From Magallana gigas (Eukaryota), in the NCBI RefSeq assembly GCF_963853765.1, contig NC_088855.1, forward strand, positions 43,028,001 through 43,092,000: a DNA stretch of 64,000 bases, in the 5' to 3' direction. Made by a program: the position numbers and the translations under genes. Below, one piece after another: positions 1 through 64,000 of this stretch. The notes beneath the pieces were generated by a model. It was given only the letters and a program-made list of their open reading frames with translations. It searched no databases and had not been told where the DNA came from. Every line of letters begins with the position of its first letter. Position 1 is the first letter of the stretch.

Positions 1-3000
1 GAGGGACGGGTCAGAATTATGACAGCCTTTCAGGACACGTAACCGTTGTCGGCAAATACACCAGAAAATGTCTCGGATTCGGTTTAGCATGCAGATCATG
101 TCGGAAGTGTACATACGCCAGATGGAATAAAACGCAAGTTAAAAATCATAACTGCAAGAGAAATTGGACAGGATCCGCGAAGGGAATGGAACCATTTTTA
201 ACGGTGAAATGTCTCAAGTCATTGAAAGAAAAAGGCTTTAATGTCAAAAAGCTAACCATGGATGATGACACAACCACATTCATCAGAGCTAAAAAAGCAA
301 TCTCCCCGGAGTTAACGAAATCTAGCGATAAAAATCATGTCGTCAAGAATCTTACTAGCAATTTATACAAACTTCGACAGGAAAACAAAAACTTGAGTGT
401 GAAGATTATTAACTATTTCAAGAAATGTTTTTCATACGCAGTTCAGCAAAATCGAGGTAGCCCAGCATCCCTGCAGAAAAATTTAGAGGCTATTGTTCCC
501 CATGCATTTGGAGAGCATGTCAAGTGTGATGTACACTGGTGTGGATTTTTGAAAGCCCCAAATTTGTACAAGCACAAGTCGCTACCGCACGGCAAAGACC
601 TACACGACGAGGGTCTGCGGAAGTCACTGTCTTGTGTATTCGCTAAATATGCCGCTAATGCCGACAAACTTGCTGATTTGGAGTCTTCAAATTCAAATGA
701 GAATCTCAACCAAATGATTGCAAAGAAGGCGCCAAAATCACAACACTATTCTGGGTCAGAGAGTTTAGCCTATCGCCTATCTGCATCTGTAGCACAGAAA
801 AATGAGGGACACAAGTATATGTTAGAGGTAAGTATCTAAATTAAAAAAAAAACACGTTTATTATTCGTAAATTAGGGGGGGGGGTGTCAGGGTGATGGGT
901 GACCGAATTACCTGTATATTTTTGTGTAAGAATGTTTTTTTATAATCTTGTTATACATAATTGTCTCTTCTAATTACGTAGGTCAACAAAACGTGCAATC
1001 TTTCACCTGGAAAACACACAGCAGAAAGGCTTCAAAAGTTGGACGTGAAGAGAAACATAAAGAGAGCCAAACAGGGCACTGTCCAGGCGAAGCGGGATAG
1101 GCTAAGGGCAAAGGAAAATCGGCATTCTGCACAAGCATTAGAGGAACTTAAGGAAGGAACAACGTACGAGTCGGGTGTTTTAATAAATAAAGAAGAGGCT
1201 CAGCTTGAAGAAGAGATACAAGAAATCCCTTTACCAGAAACCGACAAAAAACGGACTGTGGTCTCCCCTGCTCCGTCTTCTTCTAGTTCAATTATTGTTC
1301 TTGATCTAGAAACTACAGGATTTGGTAAGTGTTTACTATACATTTATATTATGAATTGATGAAAATATAGAATCTAAGTAATTATATGTTTCAAAGATGT
1401 AAGACATTTTGTGTATTTATTTTCAGCTACAGAAAGCAGTATTATACAAATTGCGGCAAGAGATTTAAAAACATCTGATCATTATGTGAGATTTATCATG
1501 CCAGAAAATGGTTTTGTCCCGTCTGCCGTATCAAAGCTGACTGGCATCGAAGTGCATGGACTGACCATGTATTATAACCTTGTTCCGGTAGAATTTACAT
1601 CATGCAAACGTGCAGTTGATGAATTCCTGGCATGGCTGAAAAAATACAAATCGCCGCTGCTTGTTGCGCACAATGCAAAGTTCGATGCGCGCATCCTAGT
1701 GTCCACCATGTGCAGACTTAAGATGGATGACCACCTTAAGGACATCGCTGGATTTAGTGATTCAATGCATCTTTTCAAAAAAGAATATCCAGGAAGAGGC
1801 TCCTACAAACTGGAAAGTCTATCAACCGACCTAATGGAGCAGCAGTTTGAAAACATGCATAATGCCGAAGTCGACGTCAACATATTGACAGCTCTATTGA
1901 AAAGAGTGTCAAACGTACATGAAAAACTGATAGACATATCATTTTCAACTGAAAGTGTTCTCGTTAACAATCAAAAACTGATCAACAAAAAAATGTATTT
2001 GTCAAGTTTCAGTGGTTTAATAAATGAACAGGTACTCTCTAAAACACAGTGCAGCAATCTAGCCGCGCAGGGAATTGGCGAATTCCACATATCTTTAGTT
2101 AGAAAACGGGCAGGAACGGAAGGGATAAAAAATATGCTGAGGGGGAAAATCACAAAACTTGACTCTGTTTGTGAAAAACTTTCCAAGTTCTACAGTTCAA
2201 ATAATGCACAATGAATCATGGTTAATGCCTGCATGTGATCTTACAAAAACAACGTGTTATACATGATTGTATAATTAGGGTCAAGTAAGCCTTCTCTTTT
2301 CTTGTCTTGTCAGACAAAATGATCTCTTTTGTGCTTTCAAATTATCCAAACACTCATTATTACCATTTTTTAAAAAATATTGTGTATTTTTAATTAGTTT
2401 AATGATTATAAGCTTTTTTATCTTTTGAAAAAAAATCACTTTTACTCAAATGTTATAAATGTATGAATGTGTACATGTACGAAATATCAGATAAAATGTG
2501 CTTATACTTCCACATTTTTTAAAATTTTTTTTTTTTGGGGTGGGGGTGGGGGGGGGGGGTGGGGGTGCTATATAGTGCTATATAATGTTAAAGAGAAATC
2601 CTAGACATTCATTCAATATAACTCTGAAAAAAAGTTGCAGTTTTAACAATTCTAAATTGATTTTCTTGTAAATCCTATAAGAAAATTTAATGAAAGAGAT
2701 TTGACGTTGTACTTACAAGCATGACGTCAAATACGGAAAAGCGACAATTTTCGGTAAATAATCGGAAATATAAAATTAAATAGCAAAAAATCTAGCGAGA
2801 ACACATATCAATTTTTTTACATAATTAATTTGTAAATCACCTTTACTTTACGTACAGAAAATGTTGTTAGATTCGTCTAAGTTGTTAAAAAGTTATTTAC
2901 AATATCTTTAAATAACTTCAATTCGAAAATGAAGAAAAAAATGCTCATTTTCCTATATATTTCATTAGAAAAGCGTCAAAACAGCACAAAAAAACAATAC

Positions 3001-3149
3001 TAAGTTTGAAGCGGCTTTGCATGAAAATAATTTAGGCAAAGTTAATAATTTTTTTATATAATAAAGTTTAAATGCTAACAAACGAATTGACAAATTTTCA
3101 GGGTATGTTTTCTCGTGAGATTTTTTAGGGGGTAAACCCGCGACCCACC
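1..3149 (+). mobile_element. Putative autonomous DNA transposon (left part outside the window); right end ...GACCCACC|TTAA
   Basis: Contains the transposase fusion ORF, followed by about 930 bp of subterminal sequence ending in CC then TTAA (3150-3153). That end fits Kolobok-type YY termini with a TTAA target. The left TIR is not visible, so the end is inferred. Confidence 0.65.
3..2214 (+). CDS. Spliced transposase-exonuclease fusion, 5'-truncated by the window edge: Mutator-like/Kolobok-type DDE transposase + DEDDh 3'-5' exonuclease + C-terminal SAM-like region (651 aa visible)
   Basis: Exons 3-827, 982-1324, 1427-2214 with GT-AG introns in matching phases (0, then 1). The frame is open from base 3 (GTGQNYDSLSGH...CRSCRKC...HNCKRNWTGSAKGME). 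Transposase motifs: TMDDD, DKNH (D/CxxH), SNSNENLN...KKAPK (catalytic E). Exonuclease motifs: VLDLETTG (ExoI, split by intron 2), AHNAKFD (ExoII), HNAEVD (ExoIII). Confidence 0.88.
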
Positions 3150-3439
3150 TTAACTGTATATTTGATTCATACATGTATTTCTACTTTTATAGTTTGGGAA
3201 TGGTTTTCTAACATTTTTATTATTCCATAAATTTTTTAAGTTATTCATTACCCATTTCATACTTTAAAGAAAATTATTTATAAGCACATGTACTTAACAT
3301 AAGTCATACATTTGATAAACCAGTACATGTTTGGATCTTTTTACCAACAATTAAGGGACAGCCAGTCTAAATTGTCCATGAATGTAAATACATGTATAAT
3401 ATGAACTATATGATTTCTGATGTATTCTGTTGTTGACAG

Positions 3440-6400
3440 AGAAGCCAGCCAGAGATCCAGTGTCAGGCAGTGGATGCTATATATAAACTGATCAGCTGTA
3501 ACAACAGGTAATTAGTCTTACCACTGGCATTCAGGCCAAGCATTCCATTTTAGGAGATACTCACAATTTTTAGCAGTTGAAAAGGCAAACCTTGATATCT
3601 TGTGGATTTCTGACAGACGAATACTACGTGTGTAGCTCAATCAGATTTTGTGATTTATTCAATCAACATACCATTTTTTAAGGCGTCGAGCTAATGCTCG
3701 AGAGCCTTCTAGCGATCGTCTGGATTGGCAATCATCCAAATTCATTGCATAAGTATAAATTTGCTTAATCAAGAATTGGCAGATGAATACAATCAGGTGT
3801 AAAAATTCACTAAATATTAAATATTATTTTAGTTTATCGCTTACATTTTAATTGGAGAGCGTGCCCGAAATTTGCGATGTAAATTTATTTGTTATCGGGC
3901 ACGGTCTCCAAAATAAATGTAAGCGATAAACGCATCTAGTGATTTTGTTGCTAAAAATAAACACGATAATGTAGTTGGTCTGGTCGAGCATTTTAGATAG
4001 CACGTGTTGTGGATTTGTTTGTAAACAACCGTACCATAGGGAATCTTGTTTCAAACGGGAATTGAAATAAATAAAAGTATGTTTTGTTATTATAATAGGA
4101 ACATACTGTTAATGTATTCAAATCATGAACTTGTGAAAATTGTTTAAAAAAAAATAATTTATTTTTGAACTTTGAAATTTCTTCGAATTTTGTAACAATA
4201 ATGAGTTATTGAATTGTAAAAGCACAAATACCTATTTTATAAGAAAATAAACTTATTTTTGTTTTTAAAGCAGCACAAAACATAATTCATATACTTCTCT
4301 ATTCTATGTCTAAAATTATTTGAAATACGAAGTCACTATTAAATTAACAGAAATTCAAGTTATTGATATCATTCTATATAAAAGAAAATGTCTGTTCGAC
4401 ACCTTTGTGGCCGTTCCGGCCTTTGATTCTAGTATATAAGTAGGGTGATTTCACCATGCATCGGACAGCTTTGGGTTTTTCCCTTTGTTCATGCATCAAA
4501 TATCGTCCAAATATAAACAAAACTTGTTTTAAAAGTTCCAGGTTTTCCCCATGCTTAATTATTGGAGAAATAATTGTGAAATTGTAAAAAATGTAGAAAA
4601 TAAAAAGCAAATTAATGAAGTGTTGAACTATTTCACCATGGATCGGACAATATTCACCAAGCATCGGACAGCTATATAGTAGAGATTTAAAATAACATTT
4701 TCTGGTTTTAATGCAAAAATACAATGGTTCGGAAAAATAAATTCATTCAATTGCTATTCAGATTTCTTTTAATGTAAATCCTCAAATCTACATATAGGAA
4801 TTTAGACTAGTGTTTCTGTTTAAAGGAATATTTATCATGAGGGGTTCTTTATCGTGCCAGCTCCTACAGGAACTTTGGACTAAAAAGGCTGTGTCCGTAG
4901 AACTCGAATTTTAAGTGGTCTGAGGAAAATGTTTGTATCAATTATTTTTTAAATATTTTTTTTACTTCACATTTAAAGTATATCACAAGGAATGGGCACA
5001 TAATCTCCTTATTATTAGAAGAAATCATGCACTGAAAGCTGTCCGATGCATGGTTAATTTGTGTCCGATCCATGGTGAAATGAACATGAAAAATGACCTT
5101 GACATTAATTGTTCAAATTTCTTGGACTTATTTTAATCAAATTTTGCTTTAAAACTTACTTCTTTCTAATTATTTTACGCAGAGAATGCATTTTCACTAA
5201 TTCACAATCAAATGCACAACATTCAAATAATGCTTTAGTGCAAAATCTTCATAACTATATTTTCAATGATGGCATATTTGACGTCATTTAACGATGCCTA
5301 TATTGCTATTTCTTTGACAAAGAGAATGTCAAATTCTTAATAATGATAAAGTTCATTAGTTCTAATTCAGGAATATACGAAACAACACATGAGCGCATGC
5401 ACGTTTTTTGTATATTTATAACCAAAGTTTTCCGATCCAAGGTATCTGTCCAATGCATGCTTAACTCTTCCTACTGTGATAAGCATGATCAATAGCAAAT
5501 ATCTCTCTGAGTAAACTGTTATAATTGTGTATCTCAATGAAGAAAGTTTAGGGTTCCTTCTGTATTTAATAATTATGATATCACACAAGTAGATGAGATA
5601 TTATTTTTAATCTAACATTTTTCAATAGAATATTAGCAATATTAATATTAAGATTTTTTTAGATATATTAAATTCCAGCTTTTACTGTATCAAGAAATTA
5701 CCCTGAAATAAGTTTATGTTCTGATTTTTACGGATCCTAAGTATGTACATGGCTGCATTTAAAAATAGAATATACAGGAAATTACAGTGTTTTGTTGTAA
5801 AAAAAAATTTTCTTAAAATAAAATTTGATTTTTAATGGTTCAATAGAAGAACAGCTGACTAACTGGATTCCTGTTTTAGGTTTGTGAAGGCGTTCAGTGA
5901 CGCCTCAGTCCTTGAAGTTCTGTGTGAGATCCTAGAGGTGGCCGACGAACGAGAGGTCTGTTGTCTTCTCTTGAATCTACAGTATAAATGTTTTCATGAA
6001 AACATTCCTTGTATAGTGTAATTGTGTACTAACTTTAAACTTGAAAGCAAGTTAGTGATAAGATGTTCAGACTGATCGTTATTCATTATTTTGAGATGGA
6101 GAGAGAGAACAACTATTTAAAAGTTGTGATGCATTAACATGTGATGGTTTTTTTCTTCTTCTTCACAGACACTGTATGGAACAGGGAGAGCACTAAATAT
6201 CATCTGTAAAAAATCCAAAAGGTATGTGATCCTGTATTGATTAAATCAGTTGGTTATAAGGGTGGTGCACTAGATAGTTAAACAAATTGCTTTACCGATT
6301 CCTCTATCTGTTTGCAATATCTTTGTACTGCTGTTTAGGTTAAGCTACTGGTACTCCAGTGAAGATGCATTGAAGCTTATATTAAACTGGAATCATAACT

Positions 6401-9400
6401 GTCGCTCATTTTCAATTTTAAACAAGATTCTCACAACATATTCTAATGCACTAAAAATGCTTTCTGTGCATGAAATGGATTTTTGTTTCAGACACATAGT
6501 TTAGATGATAATTTTTTGGACCTTATGAAGTTAGAGAGGTCTGACATTTGCCATAAAATGTACTTGTTTTAAAAGTTATCTTTACAGAAATTAAAAGTGT
6601 TGTACTTTTTCATAAAAAGAATATAATAGGTTTTTAGTATAAAATTCAGTTTTAAAAAAAATTGATACAATTGGTAGATTACATCATTATATTTAGCATT
6701 TTGACTGTAGATGCCTTTACTACTCTGACTTTTATTGTGCATGATGAATGAAGAACACTGAAGGCGCATGCATCTAAATGTCGGGTTTGGAGTCATAGTA
6801 ATTCTGTACTTAGATGAGTTTACTTTTGGTCTTGATGGTTATTGATATTTTAGCCATAATTATTCTTTTTTTTCATCACATATTTTGAGCAACATAAAGT
6901 CTTCCGTGCAAAGCTTTCCCCACTCATTGATCTGAATGTTGAAGCTGGGTATTATCTATGAAAAAGTTTCCAATTCTTTAATTTGTGAGAGTTTTTAGGT
7001 ATCCAAGTAATATAGTGGACACTGGACTCGCTTCTCATTGGGTATGGTGGTTGCCATTTTGGACCTGTGGCTTCTCTTTTGGTACTATGGCTTCCTCCCA
7101 CATCAATGACCCCTTTGCGCTAACATCCATGCCAACAAGAGATATTAATATAAGTTTTAGAAATAGTTTATCAATCATTGTAAAAATAAAATCAAGTTCA
7201 GATTTTACCATATTTATGACACAGTTCAAATCCTGGATGACTACTTGGAAATAACATACTAACCTTCTCTTGAATATAATGGCGTGTTTACCTATGATAT
7301 TGAAGATGAAGCAAGTTAAACATGAAAAAGCATGAAATAGCTTGAAATGAATTTACTTGAATGTTTTTGAGATATGGATTTTGCATGAAATATACACTTG
7401 GCTTTATATTTAAATGCCACAATAAAGATGAAAACATACTTGGGTCGAAAGATTTTGTTATTTAGGGGAGTGATGTGGCAAGAACATGTAGGTCTGCTCT
7501 TTTTGCATTTACATGAGTGGAAAATTTCCTAACAAAATTAAATTGAAAAGTTCAGAATTGCTTACCATTTTACACAAAATTATGTTTGAGTATTTCTGAA
7601 ACTTAGAGAAGTCAAAGTAGTATGTGTTGGTGGGGTGTGGACCATGTGTTTGGGAAATATATGTAAACCTATGCACCCAAAATTGGCCGGAGTACCTATG
7701 CACCTGCCTAAATTATTGCTTAAAGATATTCATCTGTGACAGCAGTGCTTTGTCATTTATTAACAATAATAATTTTAAAAATATATGCACTAAAGCTTTT
7801 CAAGCCCGACATATTTATGAGTGGTTTAGGTTATCAAAACAGATGTTTGTAAATCAAATCCATATTTAAAAAAACAAGAAAATTCCCAGTCAGTCGTAAT
7901 AAGATTAATTGATTGTCGTCAAAAGGTTTTTTTGTGTCAATTTAAATGTATGCTAAACTTCACCCTAGCTTTACCAATGATGATTCGATAGAGACATTCC
8001 AAGAACATTTTGATAACCCCTCTAATATATTGATATTCATGATTAATTTGTATTTTGATTTGTGTTGTTGTGTCTCTTTTGCATATTCATCTTTTAATTA
8101 ACCCATTTAAGGTTCTCCAATCCTCAGCCTCAAAGTATTTTTTTTCATTACAAAAATTTTATCCTTCAAACTTTATAAATGAAATAAAATAGAAAGAATT
8201 TATTTATAGTATCCATGCATTTTACGAAGTTATTGCAATTTTGGCTACAGCGGATATAATGGAATAAATATACAAGCTTTGATCAATTTTTTAAAAGAGG
8301 ATTGTACCGTTGCATCGATGGCTGAAACTCCTGTACTTTGTGTAGTTGGTCTCTGCGGAGCCACTAAGCCAAGCAGGTCGTTGAAAAGCTGATATTAACA
8401 CTACAAAACTAATTAAAATTTGTCTATATAAAAGGCAGATTTATGGTACATATGGAAATGTTCCGGATAATTTAGATTTATTGAACATAGCTGAGGATCA
8501 GTGATTGTTAAGAAACTACTGCGTAACAATAAATTTTATTCCAGTTTTGTTTGTGTAAGTAGAAATGGACCAGACTTAGAGATATGTAATTGTGTGACTA
8601 TTTGATACATATCAAAATACTATGAACTTTTAAACTTTCTGGTCAATTTTATACTTTCATTTTTTGAGTATTTTCTGAAACAAAATACGGAAATGAAGTC
8701 ATTTTTTGAAATTTTTACAATGCTAACAAATTTCAACATCGCATGCTATTAGCTGACAGGGAATAAGAGTCCAAATTCCCAAGACAGTCCTCATCTGTAC
8801 AAGATGATAATACTGTACAATTCAGGACAAGGCATTGTGAAGTTGATTGTGGTTACACAGTAAATTGATACATGCCCTACCCTCGGCCTGCTTTGGGTTG
8901 GTTACCAGGCACTGCAGTAGCTACCTGCACTCATTTCTGGCTCTAACAGATCATTGCAAATTTCCGAAACTTCATTTTCTCATCATAGCTCATCGCTTCC
9001 TCATCATAGCTCATCGCTTCCTCATCATTTCCTTCTCTCTTCTTTTGATAAAGGATTGTTTTTTTTTACAAATTTGTTTAGTATGTGCCGATACCGGAAA
9101 AACCACGTCCGTCTTCCGGGACAACAAGATTCAGTCATCAATGTTATAACACAATCACGTTCACAACTACCTGTCTCTACCAAGAAGTGGTAAGTGTGAA
9201 CGCTGACGGGGCCGGCTTCACTCTCTGTAGTCTCTCTGTCACTAATGTAGATAATAGTCAGACTCTGAACAAGCTCGGGCTTGAATGATGCTACAGCTAC
9301 CCACAGCCCCTCTTATACAGCTTTGTAAATGAAACACATATTGAAAACTTGACTGGTTAGAGTGGTCTTGCATGATGATTAGCAATGGTAGAGCCATCTA

Positions 9401-12400
9401 GCAATGGTCATTCTTGCTTGCTCCTGCATTTTCAGTAGGGTAGAACATTCCTAGAGTCCTTTTTTATTCAGAGTGTATTCTTCAATGTTTACATATTTTT
9501 GTTTTATTTATTTGTTTGCAGTGCTTCTGATATTGTGTACCACTTCAAAGTCTGTCATTTAATTGCGGCATCACTGGAACGCACCACCGACCTCGAGGCT
9601 TGCCGAGCTCTCCTGGAGTTTCTTGTGACACTAGTGGATAAAAATGGGTAGGATTGACAGGAAAATAATATTATGTACATAAAGGTCTCTTTGATTGCTG
9701 TATCTGCACCAATATGCTTAAAAGTGTCTAGCTAACAGAGGATAGAAAGAGTTTATGCTTAAAAAAGATATACCGTATTTTTCCGACGATTAGTCGGTAT
9801 TTTTTTCTTTTAAGCAGAGCACCCGACTTATCGTCTTGATCGACTTGTCTAAGGCTTGAGGTCAGAAAATTGTTAAAAATATTATTAAAAATCTTGGTTT
9901 TAATCATCTTGAGTTGGCTGTGTGCTTGAAAATTATGTTGTTGAATTCATTGTTCATCTTTAATAATTATCATTTTCACCCATCTGTTAACACTAGAATA
10001 CATAATAATAACAGTTATTAAAAAATGCTGTCAAATGCTGTTTTGCACATCACGCGATATCTGGAATTGTTTACAATGCAGGCAACTTTGTAAATGTTGC
10101 CGGTATTTGAAAATATGATGCATAAAGTACAAAGTGTAATTGTTTAATTTTTAATCATTAATAATTTTTGGTAGCAATATTGGGGACATCATGGCATCAT
10201 TCACTGATAATGTTACTGCATTTTTATACGCCATTTTGAAGTGATAAGATAGACGTATCGTCTGAATCGACGTATCGTAGGATTTTGTTAAAATTTTTGC
10301 TAAAAATGAGCAATTCGACTAGTCGTCTGCATCGACATTCGTCGGGAAAATACAGTATGTACTTTGGAGAAGAGAAACTGTAATATAATGGTACATTTAA
10401 TTAATGACTCTAATAGAAGATGTCATCTAAACTTTTATAGGTCAAATTGGCCAAACTCTTAGGACAATAAAACAGTTGCTTTAAAATTCACTTACCACTC
10501 ATTTTAACACCACAAGTCTTTAAAATCTGTGCAGTAAAGTAGTACATGTACATGTAATGGCAAATCTTGTCTGATACTGAAACATTCATATTCTACCTGT
10601 AAATGAATATAAATATATGTTTCAATTCTTAAAGCTGAACACCGCTCGTAAATAGGCACTGTCCGCCATATTTCTCTTTAATCACTGCTGTCCTTACAAC
10701 CCTTATATAAGGGACAGACCTCTAAACAGTTCAAAATACTTTGCTGTAGAAGTCTCACCTGTGTGGACGTACATTTTGTCTCGCCGTGTTACTCGGTCGC
10801 GATGAAATTATCAAATGTTACGGACCTTTTTGGAGCCAGGAGAATACTAACATCAAATAAATTGGTCAATGCATTATTTACGAACAGAAAATGAAGATAA
10901 GAAAAAAATGCATAAAATCTAAAGACCACAAAAGGAATACTACATGTCGGCCACGAGGTTCAGGTGTGCAATCGGGTGTAACGAAATCGAAGGGTTTATA
11001 TACCAGGTATCTGTGTGACGGTGCCTATTTACGAGCGGTGTTCAGCTTTAACATGTAAAATATTTTACTTCACAATTAGGATGTGATGTGATACAGAAAA
11101 TGTTTTCAATGCTTAACTGATTATGATGGAGGAACAATCTTTTTAGTGACATAGGAAATGATATCTATGAAATTGTGAACATTATTGTATTTGAAAATTA
11201 TGTTTATTAAACGGTCTTGAGTTAGATTAAATGACCCTTCAGATTGTTTATTAAAGATGCATGTATGTTAACACTTCAGTATACCCAGAACACATTTTTT
11301 TCTTCCTAAAGAAAACAAGAACCACTTCACAATGAAAAACTTGCCAAAGTTGTTGTTTCCAAGATGGATTCGTTCTTCAAAGATGATGTGGTGAGTTCAC
11401 AGTGTACTCTAATATGACCATAGTTACAAAATAACTCAAGAGAAATCTTTTTCTGGAACAAAATTTATTTGGCACGTTGTGTTGTATAAATCACAGTGTT
11501 TAAAGTTTTATATTTCTAATCACTATATTAACATGGTGGATCATTGAGTAAAGGTCTTTAGATTTTTGCTTTCATAGTAAGTTCTATGTCCCATGGATTT
11601 TTTGTTCAGAAAGTTAAGCACAATTTTACATTAGCACAGCCTTATGCATTTTCAAGCAAGTGTCAAACAACTCCATATCACAGTTAATGGCCTGTAATGC
11701 TTGGGTTCCTGCGATTATTCACTGACTTCTGTACATCTGACAGAAGTTCTCAGTCTCTGGTTGGGCCATTCTATCAATGACCAGTCTTCTGGTAGGGGAC
11801 TCTGGGAGAACGGTCACTCCCTCCCCAGGGGAAGTCTGGAGGATCAGGTTAGACAACTCCAGAACCCTGGACCAGACCTTCCTCCTGTAACACTTGACCA
11901 TGTACTGGTATCCCTCAATCACTGAGAGTCGCAGTAGGTATTGGCGCTGAAATTCATTCTGCCCAGTCACTGAGGCCTGGAACAATCTCTGGTCAAGTTC
12001 CTTTTGAATGCTTTCTGAATTAAACAGAAAAAGGTTGCCATATGAATTATATGTCCTCAACCAGAATAACCTACAGGTCACTAATAAAAGTCATGCAACC
12101 TATTTCAACTAGAAGTTATATCCACTTCATTTTACCAGCGTTTACATGCAAAATATGATAATAAAAGTTAAAAGTATTGGTTCTGATAGCTTCAGTTTTC
12201 ATACAAGGGAATTGGTTGACAATTCATCAAATAATTTTTTGGAAAAACTTATCCTTTTTGTGTAACACACATTCCAAATTTACAAGTCTTGATTTAAAAA
12301 AAAATTCATCTAATTCTTAAATATGCTTTGTCCTTGCCTTTGATTCAGGACAGTTTGCTTCAATTATAAAACTTCCTTACAAAATCTTTATACTCTCAAA

Positions 12401-13990: not shown

Positions 13991-14021
<31 letters not shown>

Positions 14022-17000
14022 TCAACACCTCCATCCTGCAGGAAAAAAAACCAAAATAGAAAAAAAAACCAAGAAGTTTTATTTTTTTTTAAATGTATGC
14101 ATATCATTTTATTTTACTTGATGCAATAATTCAAGGTTTATTTTTAATCCTCAAAGGACATTGTATCAAACTTAAGGATTTATTGCAACGATTTTTAAAT
14201 GTCAAAAAAGTTATTTAATTAATCCAATAATTGACAAACAAGGTCATGATTTACACCAAAGTCTTGAAGCACATATACATAAAAAACTGTATTTGTATGG
14301 TTTTATTGTTGGATGATTGAAAATGAACATGACATTTTGTGTGTTAGGGCCATTAAGCAAGAGAGGTTGAGTGTGGAGACGTGCAGGAGATGTGAGTGGC
14401 TGATGAACCACCTGGTGGTGCAGGTCCCCATCTCCCGGGCCCTCAACAACCAGCCCATCCACCCACGCAGGTCAGGGGCCCCGCACCAAAGGTAGGTCAC
14501 CACCACTAGACTGGGAGGGGGATTATTGGTGAAGTCACTATCACTAGACTGGGAGGGGGTGATAGTGAAACCTGTACCTGCCTACAAAATCAAACATTGT
14601 AATATCATCGATATCAGTGCATGGTAACACATGCATACAGGAAAGGGTTTTCATTATAGAAGAAGTAGTTTTCATTATTTGTGAATTATGGTTGATGAGA
14701 AACACTGATAAAAAGAAAGGGTCTTCATTTTATAAAATGGGTTTAAAAAGGTCTTGTATTCTTTTTCTTGTTCAACTCATTTGACAAAGATAGATGTTTG
14801 TTGACCATTTCATAGGTTGGTTCCAAACATAAATTGGATCCAGAACAAACGCAATGTCATCCTGGAGATTCAAGTGCCGCGAGCAAGAGACGCTCCTGTA
14901 AAACTCACTCCTAACAGTTTCATGTTCAGGTAAGGAAGATATGAAGATGTCAATTGATTTTACAGCTATTACAAAAATATTGAATGTCTTATTTATAATG
15001 ATTTCTTACTGCATTTCTTTGAATTTTTTTGTATATGTTTTATAGAACTGTTGTGGAAGATACTTTATACGAGGCAATGTATGAACTATATAGTAAAATT
15101 GTCCCAAGTGGTTGTTATGTGTCGGTTAATCGGTCAGAGGTTCAAGTCAAGTTGAAGAAAGAGGAGCCAGGGACTTGGCCACGCCTCCTCAAAGAGAAGA
15201 CAAAGGTACGTGTACATGTACTGACATTCTGTTTATTATATGAACCAATGTATGCATTTTTGAATCAGAATGTCATTTAATTAAGAAATGAAATTTTACA
15301 TGGCCTGCATTGGTCACAAGTTTCAGTATATAGGAAATGTCAAAGCATATATATACCCCCACTCCGAAGGATACTGTTTTACCCTTGTGTGTCTGTCTGT
15401 CCTTCTGTCTGTCTGTCCGTCCGTAACAAAAATTTCTGTCATATTTTTCTCAGCAACTGTTTATTGCAGATGCTTGAAATTTTAAAACACTATTTGTTTA
15501 GGCATGCCATATTGTGGTATATATTTTTGTACCAATTGGATGTCAACTTCATATGAAATGACTACTTTATTTATTTTTAGCCTAAATTTATAAACAAATT
15601 TCCGTGGAAGATTTCTCAGCATTTTTAGCCTAAATTTTCAAACAAATTTCCATAGAAGATTTCTCAGCAACTATTTATTGCAGATGCTTGAAATTTTAAC
15701 ACACTATTTGTTAAGGCATGCCATATTGTGGGATATATTTTTGTACCAAATCGGATGCCAACTTACTGTTAAATGTCGAATTTGCTTATTTTGATATTCA
15801 CATCGGAGCAGGGGTATCACTAGTGAGCATCGGCTCACAGATATCTTGTTTTTTTTAGGCCAAATGATCTTAATGTATCAATGACATCCAAATAAGTTTT
15901 GTTTGAGAAAGAGCAGATTATCTATCACCCAATCATTTAAATTTTTATATGTATATAAATATTACTGTATTTAGGCGAGAGAAATTTAATTTTTAGTTTT
16001 ACGGATTTTGTTGTAAAATATTTGGGTCGGAGGAGGAAAAAAAAAAAAATGGGCAACCTTTTATTAATCAAAATTACATATTATTTGCTTGAACTTATAA
16101 TATTAAGTTTAATTTGTCCACTATCCACTGTGTACTTTGTGTTTGTTTCAAGATCATTGATATCAACCTTACTAAACTTGTTCAGGATAACATTTTCTTT
16201 GCTTTTCATAAAAACTTTTAAGCCAAACCATGCATGGCTGATCTCCATCTTAAATACTCAATGTTATAGAGACGCTTACACTTGATTTTAAAAGCTCCCT
16301 TTGTCAAACGTTTTGCAGATTTCAAATAAAATAAAGTAATTTTAAAACCAAGATCAGTCAAACTTGAAAATTCCGGAAACATTTCCGAAGATACGAATTT
16401 TTTTTCATTATTTTTTTTTTTTACAAAATCGAAAAAATTGGGTCGGCGGATCCGTAAAACTAAAAATTAAATTTCTCTCGCCTTAATTGTAGTTGAGTAG
16501 TACATGCATTTTACATATATACATGTAGTCAGTATATTTTCACACAATTTCAGTTTCTTATCGTTGCACTTAATTCATTTGGATGTTTTTCTGTTGTTTT
16601 AGTTTCCCAATATCAGAATAAACTATGACAAGTTTGCTGGCAGCTCATCAGAGGAAGATGTCTCAGATGAAGACAATCCATTTGTTCTAAAGAAAAGTAA
16701 GGGCAGACAGCAGTGTAACGTTAAATAAGAAGAATAAAGAAACATAATTTATTTTCACCTTGATATAACCTTTGCTTTTTTCATGACCACTTTCACATCA
16801 CAAAAATACAATATGCAAACTTTATATCTAGCATTATTTGCCAGTAGAATCTTTTTAAATAGCAAAAATGACTGACACCTATAAAGAAAGTCAGACATTT
16901 ACCCCATTTTCTCAAATTTTGTAACAATAGTTTTTGTTAATATATTAGTATTTTATAACCTTTGGAAACTTGGTTCAACTTGGTTAAATCACATTTTCAC

Positions 17001-32490: not shown

Positions 32491-33687
32491 TCAATCCCCC
32501 TCCTCTACCCCCACAACCCATGGCTCTGCCTGAGCCTGCCACTTCAAAATGTAAGTCTTATCTTCCTTCATTTTGGGCCTCAGAGCCAGAATTTCATCCA
32601 CAACATCCTTCTTCAACACACAGTATACACAGAGTGTATGGAGCTGGGCGCAGCGCCTGGCCAGATTGACCAGCGCTCTCTCCAGCTCCGGAGAATTCCT
32701 CGTCTGTAAGACAACCACCTCCAGTGTGTTCTTATAAAATGACGTGGCTTGTGTGACCTCCTCATAAATCATGGTGAAGGTCTGTAGGTTCAGGACATGG
32801 ACCGGGATTTCTGGCTTCATTATTTGGGAGACTCTGTGAAGGGGACAGGTATGATCAAAAGACAGCATCACTTTTAGATCTGGCAACTTGGTTACCAGCT
32901 GCTGCCAAGCTTCTGATGACAAATCAGTGCCATACTTCTCTTCTCTCCTACAAGATATGCCAAGTTCCTCCAAAGGGGCTCTATCATCTTCGGCGAGAGC
33001 CACTAATGTGTTGTCAGACATGCTACTGTGAAACACAAAGAGCTTTTTCAATTTTCTGCATTTCTTCACCAGTTGGAAAATGCAGTTAGCTGACACTTTG
33101 CACACCAATACTTTATTAAGAAGATTTAAACTCTCCAACAATGGATGGTTCTGTGATAAAAGGTTTAACATCTCATCATCAAAGGCAACTGGCATTCCAC
33201 TCAAATCTACATTTACTAGAGAATGCATAGGTGTTTCAAGTGCTTCAGGGTTGCGTCCAAATAACAGCTTCAATGATTGCACAAACTCAGCACCAGCATA
33301 AAAGAGAGGATTTTCACCAGTAAAGTCAATTTTAATGGAAGACAGTTTCCTGTTGGTAAGATTGGCAATTCCATTTAAAATATCACGAGCTATGGTTCTG
33401 CAAATTTGTTCGCTCTGATTTACTTTCATTAAAACATGTTTCAAATGGGCACCATGCATCTCCAAGCACTTCTGATGACGAATGGCTTCTTTCTCATCAT
33501 TGCTTTGAACAATAAAGACAAAATCCCTCCAGAGAACTGGAAAGTGGAAGCAATCATTCCAAGTTTTGCACACAAATGAAGCACGGAACTTGTCTTGGAG
33601 ACTCAGATAGGAGAAGATCTGCACTACGATGTGGTCAGGCAGAGAGTTCCATGATAGGTCGTCTCCTTCTGGCTCGGGATCCGCCAT
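32491..33687 (-). CDS. FBXL8: F-box/LRR-repeat protein, FBXL8-like (intronless CDS, 398 aa)
   Basis: N-terminal F-box WNSLPDHIVVQIFSYLSLQDKFRASFVCKTWNDCFHFPVLWR followed by LRRs. The ATG is at 33687, just downstream of a splice acceptor. Subfamily assignment is from memory of the family (FBXL3/8/21 group). Confidence 0.8.
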   Translation of the reverse strand: MADPEPEGDDLSWNSLPDHIVVQIFSYLSLQDKFRASFVCKTWNDCFHFPVLWRDFVFIVQSNDEKEAIRHQKCLEMHGAHLKHVLMKVNQSEQICRTIARDILNGIANLTNRKLSSIKIDFTGENPLFYAGAEFVQSLKLLFGRNPEALETPMHSLVNVDLSGMPVAFDDEMLNLLSQNHPLLESLNLLNKVLVCKVSANCIFQLVKKCRKLKKLFVFHSSMSDNTLVALAEDDRAPLEELGISCRREEKYGTDLSSEAWQQLVTKLPDLKVMLSFDHTCPLHRVSQIMKPEIPVHVLNLQTFTMIYEEVTQATSFYKNTLEVVVLQTRNSPELERALVNLARRCAQLHTLCVYCVLKKDVVDEILALRPKMKEDKTYILKWQAQAEPWVVGVEEGD

Positions 33688-34645
33688 CACTATCTATACT
33701 TTTGGTAGGACACTGAAACATAATAAATACCGGTATATTGCTTTTATTTATTTTTGAAAAATATTACAAATTATATTAATTCAACTCATATCAAATATAC
33801 ATAGCAAGTTTATATCCTCTATATATATTCAACATAGGGTACAACTTATTTTAACACAGGATATAATTCTACAATCTTATTCCTTTTAATATCGATAAAA
33901 ATAAAAAAGTTAACCTTAAATTAAGCAAATTCCTTAGGTTTCAATAACAAATTATCTTAGTCAATTCTTTAATGTTTTCAGAATACTTGCAATTACAAAT
34001 TATGTCAAAGCACACAAAATTTCTGTGCTAGCGCCTAAAATATAATATCTATTAGGCTTTCTAATTTAAGTAAGTCACAAACAAATTCTTCAACGCTGAA
34101 ATGTTTAATCAAATAGCACTAGTGAATCAGCTGATCAGCGCAATGTATGACTAATACGGAACACATGAGTCACTAAATGGGTAAAAACGGGTTTGAGTTA
34201 AAATTTATTTAATGGATTTGTATACAACATCCGTATAGAAAAAAATGCTTCAGAGTTTTGATGGTATTCTTCTTAATTTTTTTGTAAGATTAGTTGGAAT
34301 CATGAACCCAGAACCAAACCAATGTACATACATTTACCTACAACAGTGTACAAAACTAAATAATAATGAGTAAATTGGTAATTACCGTTATTACGGATAA
34401 ATTCTCTTATTCTGCATACATTCATGACAGATAAGCGTTGCACCTTAAAGTTTCACATTATAATTTACAGAATCTAAAATCTTAGCACCAATCTGAAAAT
34501 ATAAGTTTAAGTATATATATGGTTTGGACAAATGTCACTGTCAGCCAGGTTGTATACAAGCACTCTCTACTATTAGAAGATAGAAAAACGGCGTCGTACT
34601 TTCATTTTCACTTTGACGTTCAGATTAATCCCGAAGTTTGTGGCA

Positions 34646-45374: not shown

Positions 45375-47999
45375 ATTACATTTGAGAATTGTGTTTATCT
45401 GCACTGTAAACTAAGTGACACACTTGTCTGTCAACTTTAACATAGTTTATCAATAGCCTTACATTTACTCTCGCAGAACATAAGACGACTTACGTTTTCA
45501 GTTGAAATTTTATAAACACAAACATCAGCAATATGTAGTAATTGTTCAGTGCACATATGCATCATTCCGAAACTGATATTTTGCGGCGATTTTGAGCAGG
45601 ACAAGCCTCACGCGAATACAGGTATATGTGATCCGAATAATTATAAATTTCTAAAACATAATTTGAAAATTTCTTTGCAACAAAAGATATAAAATACTCG
45701 TTTTAACTGATTCACCTGGGAATATCATCAAGGAAAGCCAAAGAATTAAAAAATTGATGTGATTCCAACGTAAAGGACAAGAACGTAGAAGGCCTGACAA
45801 ATCCCCCCATACCCAGGATTTTTAAATGACTTATGAACATTAAAAAAAATCTGTACATACGAAAGTGTGTATCTGTACATGTACATGTGATTATTTAACT
45901 GCATTTTCTGCTAAATAAGAAATATACATTAATACATGCACTTGGTACTTATCTTTGTTTTATTTGTTTTATTTACTTCCAAAACACTACAGCATGATCT
46001 CTTATTTGTGCTAGCGCTATTTTTATTCGACATTGTTTGTACAGAAAATGAACATTACATAATTGTTGTCATTAAACAAATGCTATTAAATATTTTTTCA
46101 TAATGATTCAATAAAAAAGCAAATATAATTTATTTAAGAGCAAATGAGTTCAAAAATAAAACGCCGTCTACACCATTCGAACACCCTCTCAATCGAGAAG
46201 TATGGACTACGAGCGCCCGCATAACACAGTGAGCTACGTTGACACATTAGGTTAAAAGTGAATAAATTAAACTGTTTGACAATAATTAATAAAGTAAAAT
46301 GTTTTTAGTGAAAACCACGAATTTGACCCATTATGGATCTAGCTCCATTTTAATAAATCAATAATAAAAATAAATAAAAAAATATTCTTAAAATAAAAGT
46401 ACTTTTAGAATGAAGTCCATTCATACCTAAATTTTGCAATTAAGAACAGTGAATGATCCAAGATTTTGGCATTTTTGCAAGCTTAATTTGGAAACCTATA
46501 CCTGTTGTGTTTATAGAATTACGGCACATTATTGACTCCCATAGTGAAATTTATGCTAAAAACAATTCATACAAACCGAAAATTAATATTCTAACTTTAA
46601 TTGAAATTCTTATAGGGACAGTAAGACGAAAAATAAGTTAGCTATGCAGTCAGTCGATGCGGAGTCTCCGTAAGCGGAGATCACATGGAGGTCACACTAA
46701 TATAATGTATTTATCGTCTCTACATTGACTGAATTTGACAATGGAGACGCTTGTACGTGCACGGTCTCTTGACATAGTGTGGATGACCCGTGACTTAAAG
46801 TGAAATCATAACCCCAAGGTGTACACACTTCTCTGTAACCTCTCCCTTTGTTTCCTTGGAGGCGAGATGCTTATTGCTGGTTTCGTTTTAGATGGAAATA
46901 TTCCATTAGCAGTACCACTGTGTACCACAATCTTCATTGACCTGAGAGAAATATTTGAAAAATACTTTGTTTATATATTAAGACATTGAATGTATAGTTC
47001 AATGCCGCTTATGAGTTGTCGGTGGCGGGATAAATAAGTCTTATGGCGGAGAGTGGAAACAAAAAATTATACATTATCTTATTTAGGTATAGTTGGGAAC
47101 ATTATACATGTACACGTACATGTATTTTCTTTCGTTTTAATTGATATAAGTCATAATTGTCTAGTGAATGTTTTAAAGAAAGAAATGTTTGGGTTTTTTA
47201 AACAGCAAAATAAGTAAAAAAAAATTATTTACTTCTATAAAAATTTTCAATTTGATCTCACAAGCATTTTGTCAAAATCGATAATATCTAATATTTTCCG
47301 CAATATGGATATTAGCGGGAAAAAATTATCTTGTTGATTCGAGTGAATAATTATATCCAATGAAATTCATAGTCACGAGTCACGTGGTGACGAATGTATG
47401 ATTGGTGTTCGATTAGCACGAGAAATCACTTCTAGCCCATCTTCTGAAAAAAGACGCATCAAATTTTCAACAATAAAATTTTTATTTTTTTTAATTTTAT
47501 TTATCATACCATGATTTAAATGTTTAGAATTTTTATATTTTTGTTGCAAAGCCATTGCACTACCCTGGAGACGGCGCATTTTGCGACTTTGACATGGTAT
47601 GGGACAGGTTTCAAGAGATTTTTCTGTTTAAGAATTTTTTTTGGGGGGGTGGGGGGGGGTGGGAGGGGGGTGGGAGGGGGTTGTTGGTCACGTCGTCAAT
47701 GAAAGGATCAAAAAGTTTATTTAAAAAAGGATGAGGCAGTGATTCTTAAAATTTAGTGTACACGATACATTTTTGTTTTGTTCACAATTTTAAATAAACT
47801 TCCGGTTCCACTGTATGCCTTCTGGGCTAGTCGGCAAATATACATTTGCTTGTCATTTTTGTGAGAATAGATAAGAAGTGGTGTAAAATTCAGTGAATTA
47901 AAAACAAGGTTTTCTGTCAAAACTTTCAATATTTCTGCCAACAGTAGGGCCTCCATATATAGATTTTGACTTCCCGCAGTTGAAGGTTTGTGAAGAAGG

Positions 48000-63437: not shown

Positions 63438-63981
63438 ATGAACGGATTAAGTTTTTCCGACATTGACAGACACAAGAAAGTCCCCAGCCCCGCCATGGCG
63501 GAGATTGCAATGAGGACCCTGCACGTGTCACCACGACCGCGCGTGCGATCTACCTCCATGAAAAAGCCCAAAATTAGGCTGTCAGAGGACTTTGACCTGG
63601 GAGACATTCGCCCACGAACAAGCAGTTTGCCAACTAGAAACTCTGTCAGGAAGCCTAATCTTCTGGAAATTAGATCGGCTGGAATTTTGTATGAGGACAG
63701 CGAGCATGACTTATACAGAGTGAGGACTTTTGAAAAAACAGCCAAAGGTTTGGTAAACCGAGGGGACTCTTTCATCTCGAGGAGCACAAACAGTGTTGTA
63801 TCCTCCGGAAGTGAATTTGGTGCTTTATCGAGAACATCGAGCTCAACATCCCAGGCCAGTTTCACGGAACATACCAAATCCTATCGCATACTTATGATGG
63901 GAGCGCAAGGGGTCGGGAAAACTGCCTTAACGCAACAGTTCATGACTTCGGAATATCTTGGGGGTTTCGATACAAGCGTTG
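63438..63981 (+). CDS. First coding exon of an RGK-like (Rem/Rad/Gem/Kir) Ras-family small GTPase; continues beyond the window
   Basis: Long Ser/Arg-rich N-terminal extension with YRVRTF..T.KGLVNRGDSF, then YRILMMGAQGVGKTALTQQFMTSEY (G1 P-loop). Donor G|GTAAGT at 63981/63982. Confidence 0.85.
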
Positions 63982-64000
63982 GTAAGTCTCTTATTTAATT

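What the first reader, a model, noticed from the sequence alone, without database searches (positions are those of the whole stretch)
3..2214. Intact spliced transposase fused to a DEDDh exonuclease and an Exuperantia/PML-like SAM-like tail
Seen: three exons splice into one 651-codon open frame with no stop or frameshift. It joins DDE transposase motifs (MDDD, DKNH, NSNEN) to a complete DEDDh nuclease (DLE, AHNxxFD, HNAxxD) and a C-terminal 'LSKTQCSNLAAQGI...GIKNML' helical region. Established: an EXO+SAM-like pairing occurs in Drosophila Exuperantia and in the PML C-terminal/TREX1-like exonucleases, and TREX1-type enzymes degrade cytosolic DNA. Inference: this element carries its own, probably active, 3'-5' exonuclease, which could trim transposition intermediates or hide excised DNA from cGAS-like sensing. 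Such elements could be the reservoir from which host PML/Exu-like exonuclease domains were domesticated.
Basis: partly seen in the sequence, partly recalled or inferred. Interest (0 to 1): 0.82.

Follow-up and report, generated by a model that had tools for sequence, protein, structure and literature searches.

The report
KolobokD transposon with PML-type exonuclease
This is the right-hand half of a cut-and-paste "KolobokD" DNA transposon of an oyster. Its single spliced gene fuses the transposase to an apparently active 3'-5' exonuclease of the same family as the fish PML/Plex9 enzymes; the element type was described in 2022, but its close kinship to PML has not been discussed in print.

Summary
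Exons 3-827, 982-1324 and 1427-2214 (+) have GT..AG borders and join into 651 codons plus a stop. Three independent cDNA-like public contigs, 90-99% identical, lack both introns at exactly these junctions.

The domains are a DDE transposase core (Pfam PF20700, E 9e-45), a DEDDh exonuclease with all five catalytic residues, and a PML_C (SAM-like) tail.

The transposase is Kolobok, not Mutator proper:
- It is collinear with published Crassostrea gigas Kolobok transposases, including both lineage-specific zinc fingers.
- The element ends at 3149 in ...GTAAACCCGCGACCCACC followed by TTAA.
- A Saccostrea relative has the same terminus on both ends, with TTAA duplications.

It is therefore a member of KolobokD, the Kolobok lineage with a DEDDh exonuclease (Kojima and Bao 2022). 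The family is multicopy, transcribed and under purifying selection (Ka/Ks about 0.15-0.2).

The exonuclease groups with fish Plex9/PML-type enzymes (profile E 1e-48 to 2e-57), far above Exuperantia (2e-17) and TREX1/2 (about 1e-10). By fold, PML and Exuperantia are the best Swiss-Prot matches. Whether PML's domain came from such transposons stays unresolved, because the careful tree is a polytomy.

First-stage notes report similar fusions on three other pieces of this genome.

The parts
1..3149 (+). Right-hand (3') part of a KolobokD DNA transposon. The left part lies upstream of the window.
   Evidence: Gene content. The 3' terminus is defined by alignment with a Saccostrea element. A full-length relative is 6,067 bp.
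3..827 (+). Exon encoding the Kolobok DDE transposase core from just after the first catalytic D. It holds the CCHC zinc finger (about aa 33-51, nt 99-155), the second D in MDDD (nt 258-269), the D-x-x-H signature DKNH (nt 327-338), a second zinc finger HAFGEHVKCDVHWC (nt 501-542) and the catalytic E in NSNEN (nt 690-704).
   Evidence: PF20700 at E 8.9e-45. The motifs are collinear with Kolobok-9/7/1_CGi in the published Kolobok alignment.
828..981 (+). Intron 1 (GT..AG)
   Evidence: Absent from cDNA-like contigs L002, L003 and L004. The junction is conserved in the contiguous ORF P0227.
982..1324 (+). Exon 2: a basic, hydrophilic linker of about 100 aa, then the start of the exonuclease with the Exo I motif D383-L-E385 (nt 1303-1311).
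   Evidence: Translation; no Pfam domain in the linker; D and E are conserved wherever the family alignment covers them.
1325..1426 (+). Intron 2 (GT..AG)
   Evidence: Absent from L002, L003 and L004 and from protein P0163.
1427..2214 (+). Exon 3: the rest of the DEDDh exonuclease (Exo II D476 at nt 1684-1686; Exo III H534 at nt 1858-1860 and D539 at nt 1873-1875), the PML_C / SAM-like helical domain (about nt 1999-2163) and the stop codon at 2212-2214.
   Evidence: PF00929 and PF25244. D476 and D539 are invariant and H534 is present in 36 of the 37 aligned relatives. The model has pLDDT 91, with a beta/alpha exonuclease core followed by a long helix and a helical bundle.
2215..3131 (+). 3' UTR and subterminal non-coding region. 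Three blocks (2794-2818, 2949-2978, 3088-3112) are conserved with a Saccostrea element. A T12 run followed by a G-rich tract sits at about 2526-2567.
   Evidence: Collinear 87-96% matches to L006 although the proteins are only 39-56% identical. Transcript contigs reach 2347-2488. Sequence read.
3132..3149 (+). Right terminal inverted repeat GTAAACCCGCGACCCACC, ending in CC (the 5'-RR...YY-3' rule of Kolobok).
   Evidence: 16 of 18 bases match the right end of the Saccostrea element. That element's left end is the inverted copy, GGTAGATCGCGGGTTTGC. Similarity stops right after it.
3150..3153 (.). TTAA target site (one copy of the target-site duplication).
   Evidence: TTAA directly follows the terminus here. 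It flanks both ends of the relatives in Saccostrea (L006) and Mizuhopecten (L005).

Best explanation
The window starts inside a KolobokD element: a TTAA-specific cut-and-paste DNA transposon of the Kolobok superfamily, probably in Crassostrea (Magallana) gigas. Its one multi-exon gene encodes a single polypeptide, about 870-900 aa when complete. The parts are an N-terminal zinc-ribbon region (outside the window), a Kolobok DDE core with two zinc fingers, a basic linker of about 100 aa, and a DEDDh 3'-5' exonuclease followed by a SAM-like (PML_C) helical bundle. Shown here: the splicing, the domain identities, the intact catalytic residues, the transposon terminus and TTAA, multiple transcribed copies, and purifying selection on all three modules. 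Inferred: the exonuclease is catalytically active, as in fish Plex9 and gar PML and unlike human PML and fly Exuperantia. Also inferred: being tethered to the transposase, it acts in cis on 3' ends of DNA made during excision and integration, trimming ends or removing abortive or unintegrated intermediates, with the SAM-like domain helping to hold single-stranded nucleic acid. My estimates: identity as KolobokD about 0.9; active nuclease about 0.75; DNA-end processing as the selected role about 0.4.
For: ORF and splice sites. cDNA-like contigs lacking both introns; P0163 and P0227 are contiguous across the junctions. Domains. The same three-domain architecture occurs in 9 of 10 long homologues, including scallop and newt, krill, Saccostrea and an 867-aa Mytilus protein, and in Atlas clusters of Mollusca and Cnidaria. 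Kolobok signature: the published alignment of Kolobok-9/7/1_CGi is collinear with the window, and the lineage description of KolobokD with both zinc fingers is in PMC9587614. Termini: the Saccostrea element L006 5845-11911 has a 16-18 bp TIR and TTAA on both sides. The Mizuhopecten element is TTAA|GGCAATACGCGGGTGA...TCACCCGCGTATTGCC|TTAA. The window's 3' end aligns to the Saccostrea terminus and then diverges. Multicopy: the 90% cluster of the exon-3 ORF has 14 variants, some of them truncated ORFs, and frameshifts are seen in contigs L002, L003 and L004. The exon-1 cluster has 82 members. Selection: Ka/Ks is 0.15-0.20 for transposase, linker and exonuclease against the more diverged copies L001 and L002. 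Catalytic residues D383, E385, D476, H534 and D539 are present; D476 and D539 are invariant and H534 is in 36 of 37 relatives. Fold: Plex9.1 TM 0.87, Exuperantia EXO+SAM, TREX1 about 0.75; PML and Exuperantia are the top Swiss-Prot models over both subdomains. Profile against PDB: Plex9/PML-type 2e-57 to 1e-48, Exuperantia 2e-17, TREX1/2 about 1e-10.
Against: The 5' half of this copy (N-terminus, first D, left TIR) is outside the window, so the autonomy of this particular copy is unknown. No biochemical or genetic data exist for any KolobokD exonuclease. A 3'-5' exonuclease could in principle destroy the 3'-OH ends a DDE transposase needs, so a DNA-end role is not self-evident. The closest structural relatives with a SAM-like domain (PML PXL, Exuperantia) bind RNA (PMC13659232), which leaves an RNA-directed role open. 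PML_C in this copy is only just above the Pfam cut-off (27.7 against 27.1 bits), although relatives reach 65-81 bits.
Confidence: 0.85

Rival explanations
1. The tethered EXO-SAM module is mainly RNA-directed. It could be a counter-silencing device that trims or binds small RNAs or their precursors (ERI-1-like), or a module that handles the element's own transcript, rather than a DNA-end processor.
For: The only solved EXO+SAM proteins, PML PXL and Exuperantia, bind UG-rich RNA through the SAM-like and EXO surfaces (PMC13659232). PML and Exuperantia are the best whole-module structural matches. Kojima and Bao also noted similarity to the ERI1 exoribonuclease.
Against: PXL and Exuperantia are pseudo-nucleases, whereas this protein keeps all DEDDh residues. 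Its nearest sequence relatives are the Plex9/PML-type fish enzymes. One of these, Plex9.1, is solved bound to ssDNA (9mrd), and the family is described as DNA exonucleases (PMC10123124).
Confidence: 0.2
2. The exonuclease serves 'stealth' or self-limitation. It degrades excised, unintegrated or cytosolic transposon DNA so that innate DNA sensors are not triggered.
For: TREX1 and Plex9 reduce cytosolic DNA and restrict L1 (PMC10123124). The module shares their fold and active site.
Against: There is no direct evidence. The benefit would go to the host cell as much as to the element. Fusion to the transposase argues for action at the transpososome rather than on free DNA in the cytosol.
Confidence: 0.15
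3. The locus is a domesticated host gene derived from a Kolobok transposase-exonuclease, no longer mobile.
For: The reading frame in the window is uninterrupted, transcripts exist, and Ka/Ks is low.
Against: A canonical Kolobok terminus and TTAA lie 935 bp past the stop. Many 90-99% variants exist, some frameshifted or truncated, in several sequencing runs. First-stage notes report similar elements on three other pieces of the genome (not checked by me).
Confidence: 0.05
4. The fusion is an artefact: a transposase gene and a separate neighbouring exonuclease gene were joined by the reader's choice of splice sites.
For: NCBI's annotation of the Saccostrea relative splits it into two gene models, a 451-aa 'Mutator' protein and a 295-aa 'PolC-type-like' protein.
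Against: Three cDNA-like contigs join the exons exactly as predicted. A 446-aa contiguous ORF (P0227, cluster of 56) spans the end of the transposase, the linker, the exonuclease and PML_C. Both Saccostrea gene models lie inside one TIR-bounded element. The architecture recurs across phyla.
Confidence: 0.02

Closest known systems
KolobokD lineage of Kolobok DNA transposons (Kojima and Bao, Mob DNA 2022, PMC9587614)
   Same: Kolobok DDE core with the C/DxxH signature, a zinc finger before the catalytic E and a CCHC finger after the first D. TTAA target and RR...YY termini. Encodes a DEDDh (DnaQ) exonuclease similar to Exuperantia, TREX and ERI1. Found in molluscs.
   Different: Nothing contradicts membership. 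The paper gives the lineage one paragraph and mentions neither the SAM-like/PML_C tail, nor the kinship to PML/Plex9, nor the splicing and in-frame fusion, nor vertebrate or hemichordate members. I could not check whether this exact family is already in Repbase.
Fish Plex9 and PML C-terminal DEDDh exonuclease (PMC10123124; PDB 9mrc, 9mrd, 9l85, 9l8b)
   Same: Nearest solved relatives by sequence (profile E 1e-48 to 2e-57) and by fold (TM 0.87). Complete DEDDh site. Gar 'PML protein' is 37-45% identical to transposase-fused exonucleases.
   Different: Those are host genes, either standalone or fused to a TRIM/RBCC module. This one is fused to a transposase inside a mobile element.
Human/mouse PML-1 PXL domain and Drosophila Exuperantia (EXO-like + SAM-like)
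   Same: Same two-subdomain arrangement. PML and Exuperantia are the top Swiss-Prot structural matches over residues 2-308 of the model. Pfam PML_C matches the tail.
   Different: PXL and Exuperantia have lost the catalytic residues and act as RNA or ssDNA binders. This protein keeps D, E, D, H, D. Sequence similarity to Exuperantia is much weaker (2e-17).
TREX1 / TREX2
   Same: DEDDh fold, TM about 0.70-0.76; 3'-5' DNA exonuclease chemistry is expected.
   Different: Only distant sequence kinship (about 1e-10, like bacterial DnaQ/PolC). TREX1 has no SAM-like domain. Mathavarajah et al. also place Plex9 apart from TREX1.
Other transposons with accessory nucleases: KolobokE (PD-(D/E)xK), KolobokP (His-Me), ISL2EU (YqaJ exonuclease)
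   Same: A cut-and-paste DDE element that carries a second nuclease.
   Different: The nuclease belongs to a different superfamily and has a different polarity. Here it is a DnaQ-type 3'-5' enzyme fused in frame.

Membership tests
Kolobok superfamily / KolobokD lineage | [quoted passage not shown] | tested here: met
   MDDD, then DKNH, then NSNEN in that order. They are collinear with Kolobok-9/7/1_CGi in the published alignment. The first D (CDGAWQKRG) is seen in the 99%-identical P0166, just upstream of the window.
Kolobok superfamily / KolobokD lineage | Zinc finger between C/DxxH and the catalytic E (absent in MuDR, P and hAT) | tested here: met
   HAFGEHVKCDVHWC at aa 167-180 aligns with H..H..C..W.C of the C. 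gigas Kolobok families. The rule is stated in PMC9587614.
Kolobok superfamily / KolobokD lineage | Second CCHC zinc finger downstream of the first D (KolobokP/E/D/5 only) | tested here: met
   C33-x2-C36 ... H49-x-C51 aligns with C..C...H.C of Kolobok-9_CGi.
Kolobok superfamily / KolobokD lineage | TTAA target-site duplication and 5'-RR...YY-3' termini with short TIRs | tested here: met
   The right end is ...CCACC|TTAA at 3149/3150. The left end is outside the window. Both ends with TTAA are seen in the Saccostrea and Mizuhopecten relatives, and the window's end aligns to the Saccostrea terminus.
Kolobok superfamily / KolobokD lineage | Encodes a DEDDh (DnaQ) exonuclease | tested here: met
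   PF00929; all five residues are present.
MuDR / Mutator superfamily (the name of the Pfam hit) | [quoted passage not shown] | tested here: not met
   TIRs are 16-18 bp, the target is TTAA and the zinc finger is present. PF20700 evidently also captures Kolobok transposases.
EXO + SAM-like (PML_C) module of PML, Plex9 and Exuperantia | DEDDh-fold domain followed by a long helix running into a helical bundle, plus a Pfam PML_C match | tested here: met
   PML_C scores 27.7 bits against a cut-off of 27.1 in this copy and 36-81 bits in relatives that pass the cut-off. Model helices 223-308 follow the exonuclease core. PML 562-854 and Exuperantia are the top AFDB Swiss-Prot hits.
Catalytically active DEDDh exonucleases | Exo I D-x-E, Exo II D, Exo III H-x4-D all present | tested here: met
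   D383, E385, D476, H534 and D539. Activity itself cannot be tested with these tools.
TREX1/TREX2 | Specific sequence kinship to TREX proteins beyond the general DEDDh fold | tested here: not met
   The family profile gives 1e-10 to 5e-11 for TREX1/2, similar to PolC/DnaQ, against 1e-48 or better for Plex9-type chains.

The most novel reading that the evidence does not exclude
The EXO+SAM module encoded by exon 9 of vertebrate PML, and the fish Plex9 genes, descend from the exonuclease of a KolobokD-type transposon captured early in jawed vertebrates. This would make PML-1's C-terminus, and perhaps arthropod Exuperantia, a domesticated transposon part. The facts in its favour: transposase-fused copies occur from cnidarians to a newt. 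Gar PML is 37-45% identical to them, best to the newt one. At least some 'standalone' mollusc exonuclease gene models are really pieces of such elements.
Probability: 0.3. Interest if true: 0.75.

Novelty: new member of a known kind. Interest (0 to 1): 0.45.

Why it matters
As a transposon annotation this is routine: one more KolobokD copy in an oyster. Two things give it wider value.

First, no KolobokD exonuclease has been studied. This family offers transcribed, spliced, selectively constrained copies with complete active sites. That makes it a good starting point for asking why a cut-and-paste element needs a tethered 3'-5' exonuclease.

Second, the module is a close relative of the fish PML/Plex9 exonucleases and carries the PML_C tail. 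The PML papers I read do not mention transposons, and the KolobokD paper does not mention PML. Joining the two makes the origin of PML's C-terminal domain directly testable.

Tried and rejected
- **Rest of the window:** I looked for a second copy or the left end there and found none.
- **Exact-protein look-ups to extend the locus upstream:** the window's 217-aa ORF, the C. gigas model P0224 and the newt protein P0115 are not on record. The closest ENA contig has no DNA held.
- **Word-indexed search with P0163 alone:** it returned only 5 proteins. The alignment query did better, but vertebrate sampling stayed thin: gar PML, one gar-like contig and one newt protein.
- **Phylogeny:** the quick tree put gar PML next to the newt transposase-fused exonuclease (SH-aLRT 84). 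The constrained tree with PML outside all the others had a higher likelihood (AU p 0.91), and a careful 78-row tree collapsed the backbone. I therefore do not claim nesting.
- **Mutator proper:** rejected in favour of Kolobok (see the membership test).
- **Mizuhopecten TIR:** it is not conserved in the window. The Saccostrea TIR is.
- **Origin of PDB 9l8b/9l85:** no paper found. They are Plex9/PML-type by sequence.
- **Name KolobokD in the paper's supplements:** it does not occur there, so I could not tell which listed families the authors assign to it.
Full report
**1. Observation**

- Segments 3-827, 982-1324 and 1427-2214 are bounded by GT..AG and join into 1956 nt, which is 651 codons plus TGA.
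- Pfam assigns exon 1 to PF20700 'Mutator-like transposase' (E 8.9e-45, profile positions 163-357 of 357). Only the C-terminal 55% of the transposase domain is therefore in the window.
- Pfam assigns exon 3 to PF00929 RNase_T (1.7e-7) and PF25244 PML_C (27.7 bits, cut-off 27.1).
- Exon 2 is a basic linker that ends in the Exo I motif.

**2. The splice junctions are used**

Public short-read assemblies hold close copies of this gene.
- L001 is genomic and keeps intron 2.
- L002 (SRR22371045), L003 (SRR18829211) and L004 (SRR5830809) are 90-99% identical to the window. They align in three blocks ending and starting at 829/980 and 1327/1426, so both introns are precisely missing. These are most simply spliced transcripts.
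- Protein P0163 reads across junction 2.
- The 446-aa ORF P0227, from a related family with 56 cluster members, runs without interruption from the end of the transposase through the linker, exonuclease and PML_C. Both junction sequences are conserved in it.
- Some of these contigs (L002, L003, L004) carry frameshifts. The 90% cluster of the exon-3 ORF has 14 variants, and the exon-1 cluster has 82 members. The family is therefore multicopy and transcribed.
- Ka/Ks against the more diverged copies is 0.15-0.20 in the transposase, the linker and the exonuclease alike. The exonuclease has been under selection together with the transposase.

**3. What kind of transposon**

A literature search led to Kojima and Bao 2022 (PMC9587614). 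They define KolobokD as a Kolobok lineage from molluscs, arthropods and cnidarians that encodes a DEDDh (DnaQ) exonuclease resembling Exuperantia, TREX and ERI1. They also list the sequence hallmarks:
- the C/DxxH signature;
- a zinc finger between that signature and the catalytic E, which is absent in MuDR, P and hAT;
- in a few lineages including KolobokD, a CCHC finger after the first D.

Their published alignment contains three C. gigas families (Kolobok-9, -7 and -1_CGi). The motif chain in those families is DGxWQxRG, C..C...H.C, SxKxME, MxxD, DxNH, H..H..C..W.C, NExxN. The window protein is collinear with it: (CDGAWQKRG, from P0166), CRKC...HNC, SAKGME, MDDD, DKNH, HAFGEHVKCDVHWC, NSNEN.

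The ends agree.
- A scallop relative with the same three Pfam domains (P0028) lies between perfect 16-bp inverted repeats, GGCAATACGCGGGTGA / TCACCCGCGTATTGCC, each flanked by TTAA.
- A closer relative in Saccostrea cucullata (L006) spans 5845-11911 (6,067 bp). Its ends are GGTAGATCGCGGGTTTGC... and ...GTAAACCCGCGATCTACC, with TTAA on both sides.
- The window's 3' non-coding region shares three collinear conserved blocks with that element. It then shares the terminus itself...GTAAACCCGCGACCCACC (3132-3149), followed by TTAA (3150-3153). After that the two sequences are unrelated.

The window thus holds the right 3.15 kb of an element of roughly 6 kb or more. The Pfam name 'Mutator-like' is only a label: this is Kolobok, lineage D.

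P0224, a C. gigas gene model, is 100% identical to 50 residues of the window and supplies an N-terminal PF20700 part. This suggests the genome is Crassostrea (Magallana) gigas or a very close relative.

**4. The exonuclease module**

All DEDDh residues are present: D383 and E385 (Exo I), D476 (Exo II), and H534 and D539 (Exo III). D476 and D539 are invariant, and H534 is present in 36 of 37 aligned relatives.

I modelled P0163, a 92-97% identical natural copy that includes Exo I, with a 37-sequence alignment. The model has pLDDT 91 and pTM 0.84. It shows a beta/alpha core followed by a long helix and a helical bundle.

| Comparison | Result |
|---|---|
| Foldseek vs PDB | Plex9.1 (9mrc, TM by target 0.87), then Exuperantia EXO+SAM (5l80), then TREX1 (about 0.70-0.76) |
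| Foldseek vs AlphaFold Swiss-Prot | Mouse and human PML (residues 562-866), then four Exuperantia proteins, each aligned over both subdomains |
| Family profile vs PDB sequences | 9l8b 2e-57, 9l85 8e-50, Plex9.1 1e-48; then a gap to Exuperantia 2e-17, PolC 3e-17, TREX2 5e-11, TREX1 1e-10 |

9l85 and 9l8b are Plex9/PML-type, judged by their match to gar PML. The same profile finds 'PML protein, partial' of alligator gar at 4e-49. That protein is 37-45% identical to transposase-fused exonucleases, best to a newt protein that carries PF20700, RNase_T and PML_C.

**5. Distribution of the fusion**

- Nine of ten long homologues have all three domains.
- Named sources are Mizuhopecten, Saccostrea echinata, Mytilus coruscus (867 aa), the krill Meganyctiphanes and the newt Lissotriton.
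- ESM Atlas clusters with this architecture are mostly Mollusca (868 aa and 701 aa) and Cnidaria (659 aa).
- The transposase part also has relatives in Ptychodera and Paramuricea.
- The vertebrate record and the hemichordate transposase relative would extend the range given in the 2022 paper. I did not verify transposon ends there.

**6. Does PML come from such elements?**

A quick tree of 111 rows rooted on bacterial DnaQ placed the gar PML pair next to the newt fused exonuclease (SH-aLRT 84), inside a clade where fused copies are scattered. Two checks undercut this:
- The constrained alternative, with PML outside all other eukaryotic rows, had a better likelihood and is not rejected (AU p 0.91).
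- A careful tree of 78 rows leaves the backbone unresolved.

What is solid is the 100/100 clade that joins PML-type, standalone and transposase-fused modules against bacterial DnaQ, and the well-supported position of the window's module among mollusc sequences, three of them transposase-fused. The direction of transfer is open.

Neither PML paper I read mentions transposons. No paper in the library links Kolobok with PML in any substantive way, and KolobokD appears in a single paper.

**7. Mechanism**

- **Shown:** one mRNA and one reading frame, an intact active site, co-selection of the modules, and mobile-element ends.
- **Inferred:** the nuclease is active and works where the transposase works. 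I favour processing of 3' DNA ends or removal of failed intermediates at the transpososome, as Kojima and Bao suggested. The nearest relatives are DNA exonucleases, and the in-frame fusion implies action in cis.
- **Alternatives:** an RNA-directed or anti-silencing role, prompted by the RNA-binding SAM-like domains of PXL and Exuperantia, and a DNA-sensor-evasion role. These are listed as rivals. None can be settled by sequence.

**8. Verdict**

The element belongs to an already named but barely studied lineage, so the novelty is modest. The kinship to PML/Plex9 is the part worth following up. First-stage notes report similar fusions on three other pieces of this genome; I did not check them.

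Noticed in passing
window 2526-2567: Inside the element's 3' non-coding region there is a T12 run followed by a G-rich tract (G4 T G5 T G12 T G5). Short similar T/G-rich tracts occur at about 13994-14025, 47635-47669 and 52923-52953. PML's PXL domain is reported to prefer G-rich ssDNA and UG RNA (PMC13659232), so a link to the element's own EXO-SAM module is conceivable but untested.
   Followed up: no
window 2794-2818, 2949-2978, 3088-3112: Three short non-coding blocks, 87-96% identical and collinear with the 3' subterminal region of a Saccostrea element whose proteins are only 39-56% identical. They are candidate cis-acting (transposase-binding) sites.
   Followed up: partly
window 3832-3931: An imperfect 100-bp palindrome (75% self-complementary) about 0.7 kb outside the transposon end. 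It may be a hairpin or a small MITE-like element.
   Followed up: no
window 32491-33690 (-): A 399-aa ORF with an N-terminal F-box (PF12937, E 2.5e-13), apparently a single-exon host gene.
   Followed up: no
window 52558-53091 (+) and 63438-63998 (+): ORF fragments matching the sodium:solute symporter family (PF00474, E 1.4e-8) and, weakly and below Pfam's cut-off, the start of a Ras/Roc GTPase domain. These are probably host exons.
   Followed up: no
L006 1394-11008 (Saccostrea cucullata, GCA_032062105.1): NCBI annotates the transposase part and the exonuclease part of one TIR-bounded KolobokD element as two separate genes, the second named 'DNA polymerase III PolC-type-like'. Some 'standalone' mollusc exonuclease gene models are therefore transposon fragments.
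   Followed up: partly
P0043 (Mytilus coruscus, 1229 aa): It has an EXO+PML_C module at the C-terminus, but the 930 N-terminal residues have no Pfam match at all. This is either another partner domain or a chimeric gene model.
   Followed up: partly
P0248 (333 aa): A protein labelled as coming from a gammaproteobacterial metagenome bin matches the eukaryotic EXO profile at 7.6e-45, far better than true bacterial DnaQ (about 1e-9). It is probably contamination of the bin by animal DNA.
   Followed up: no
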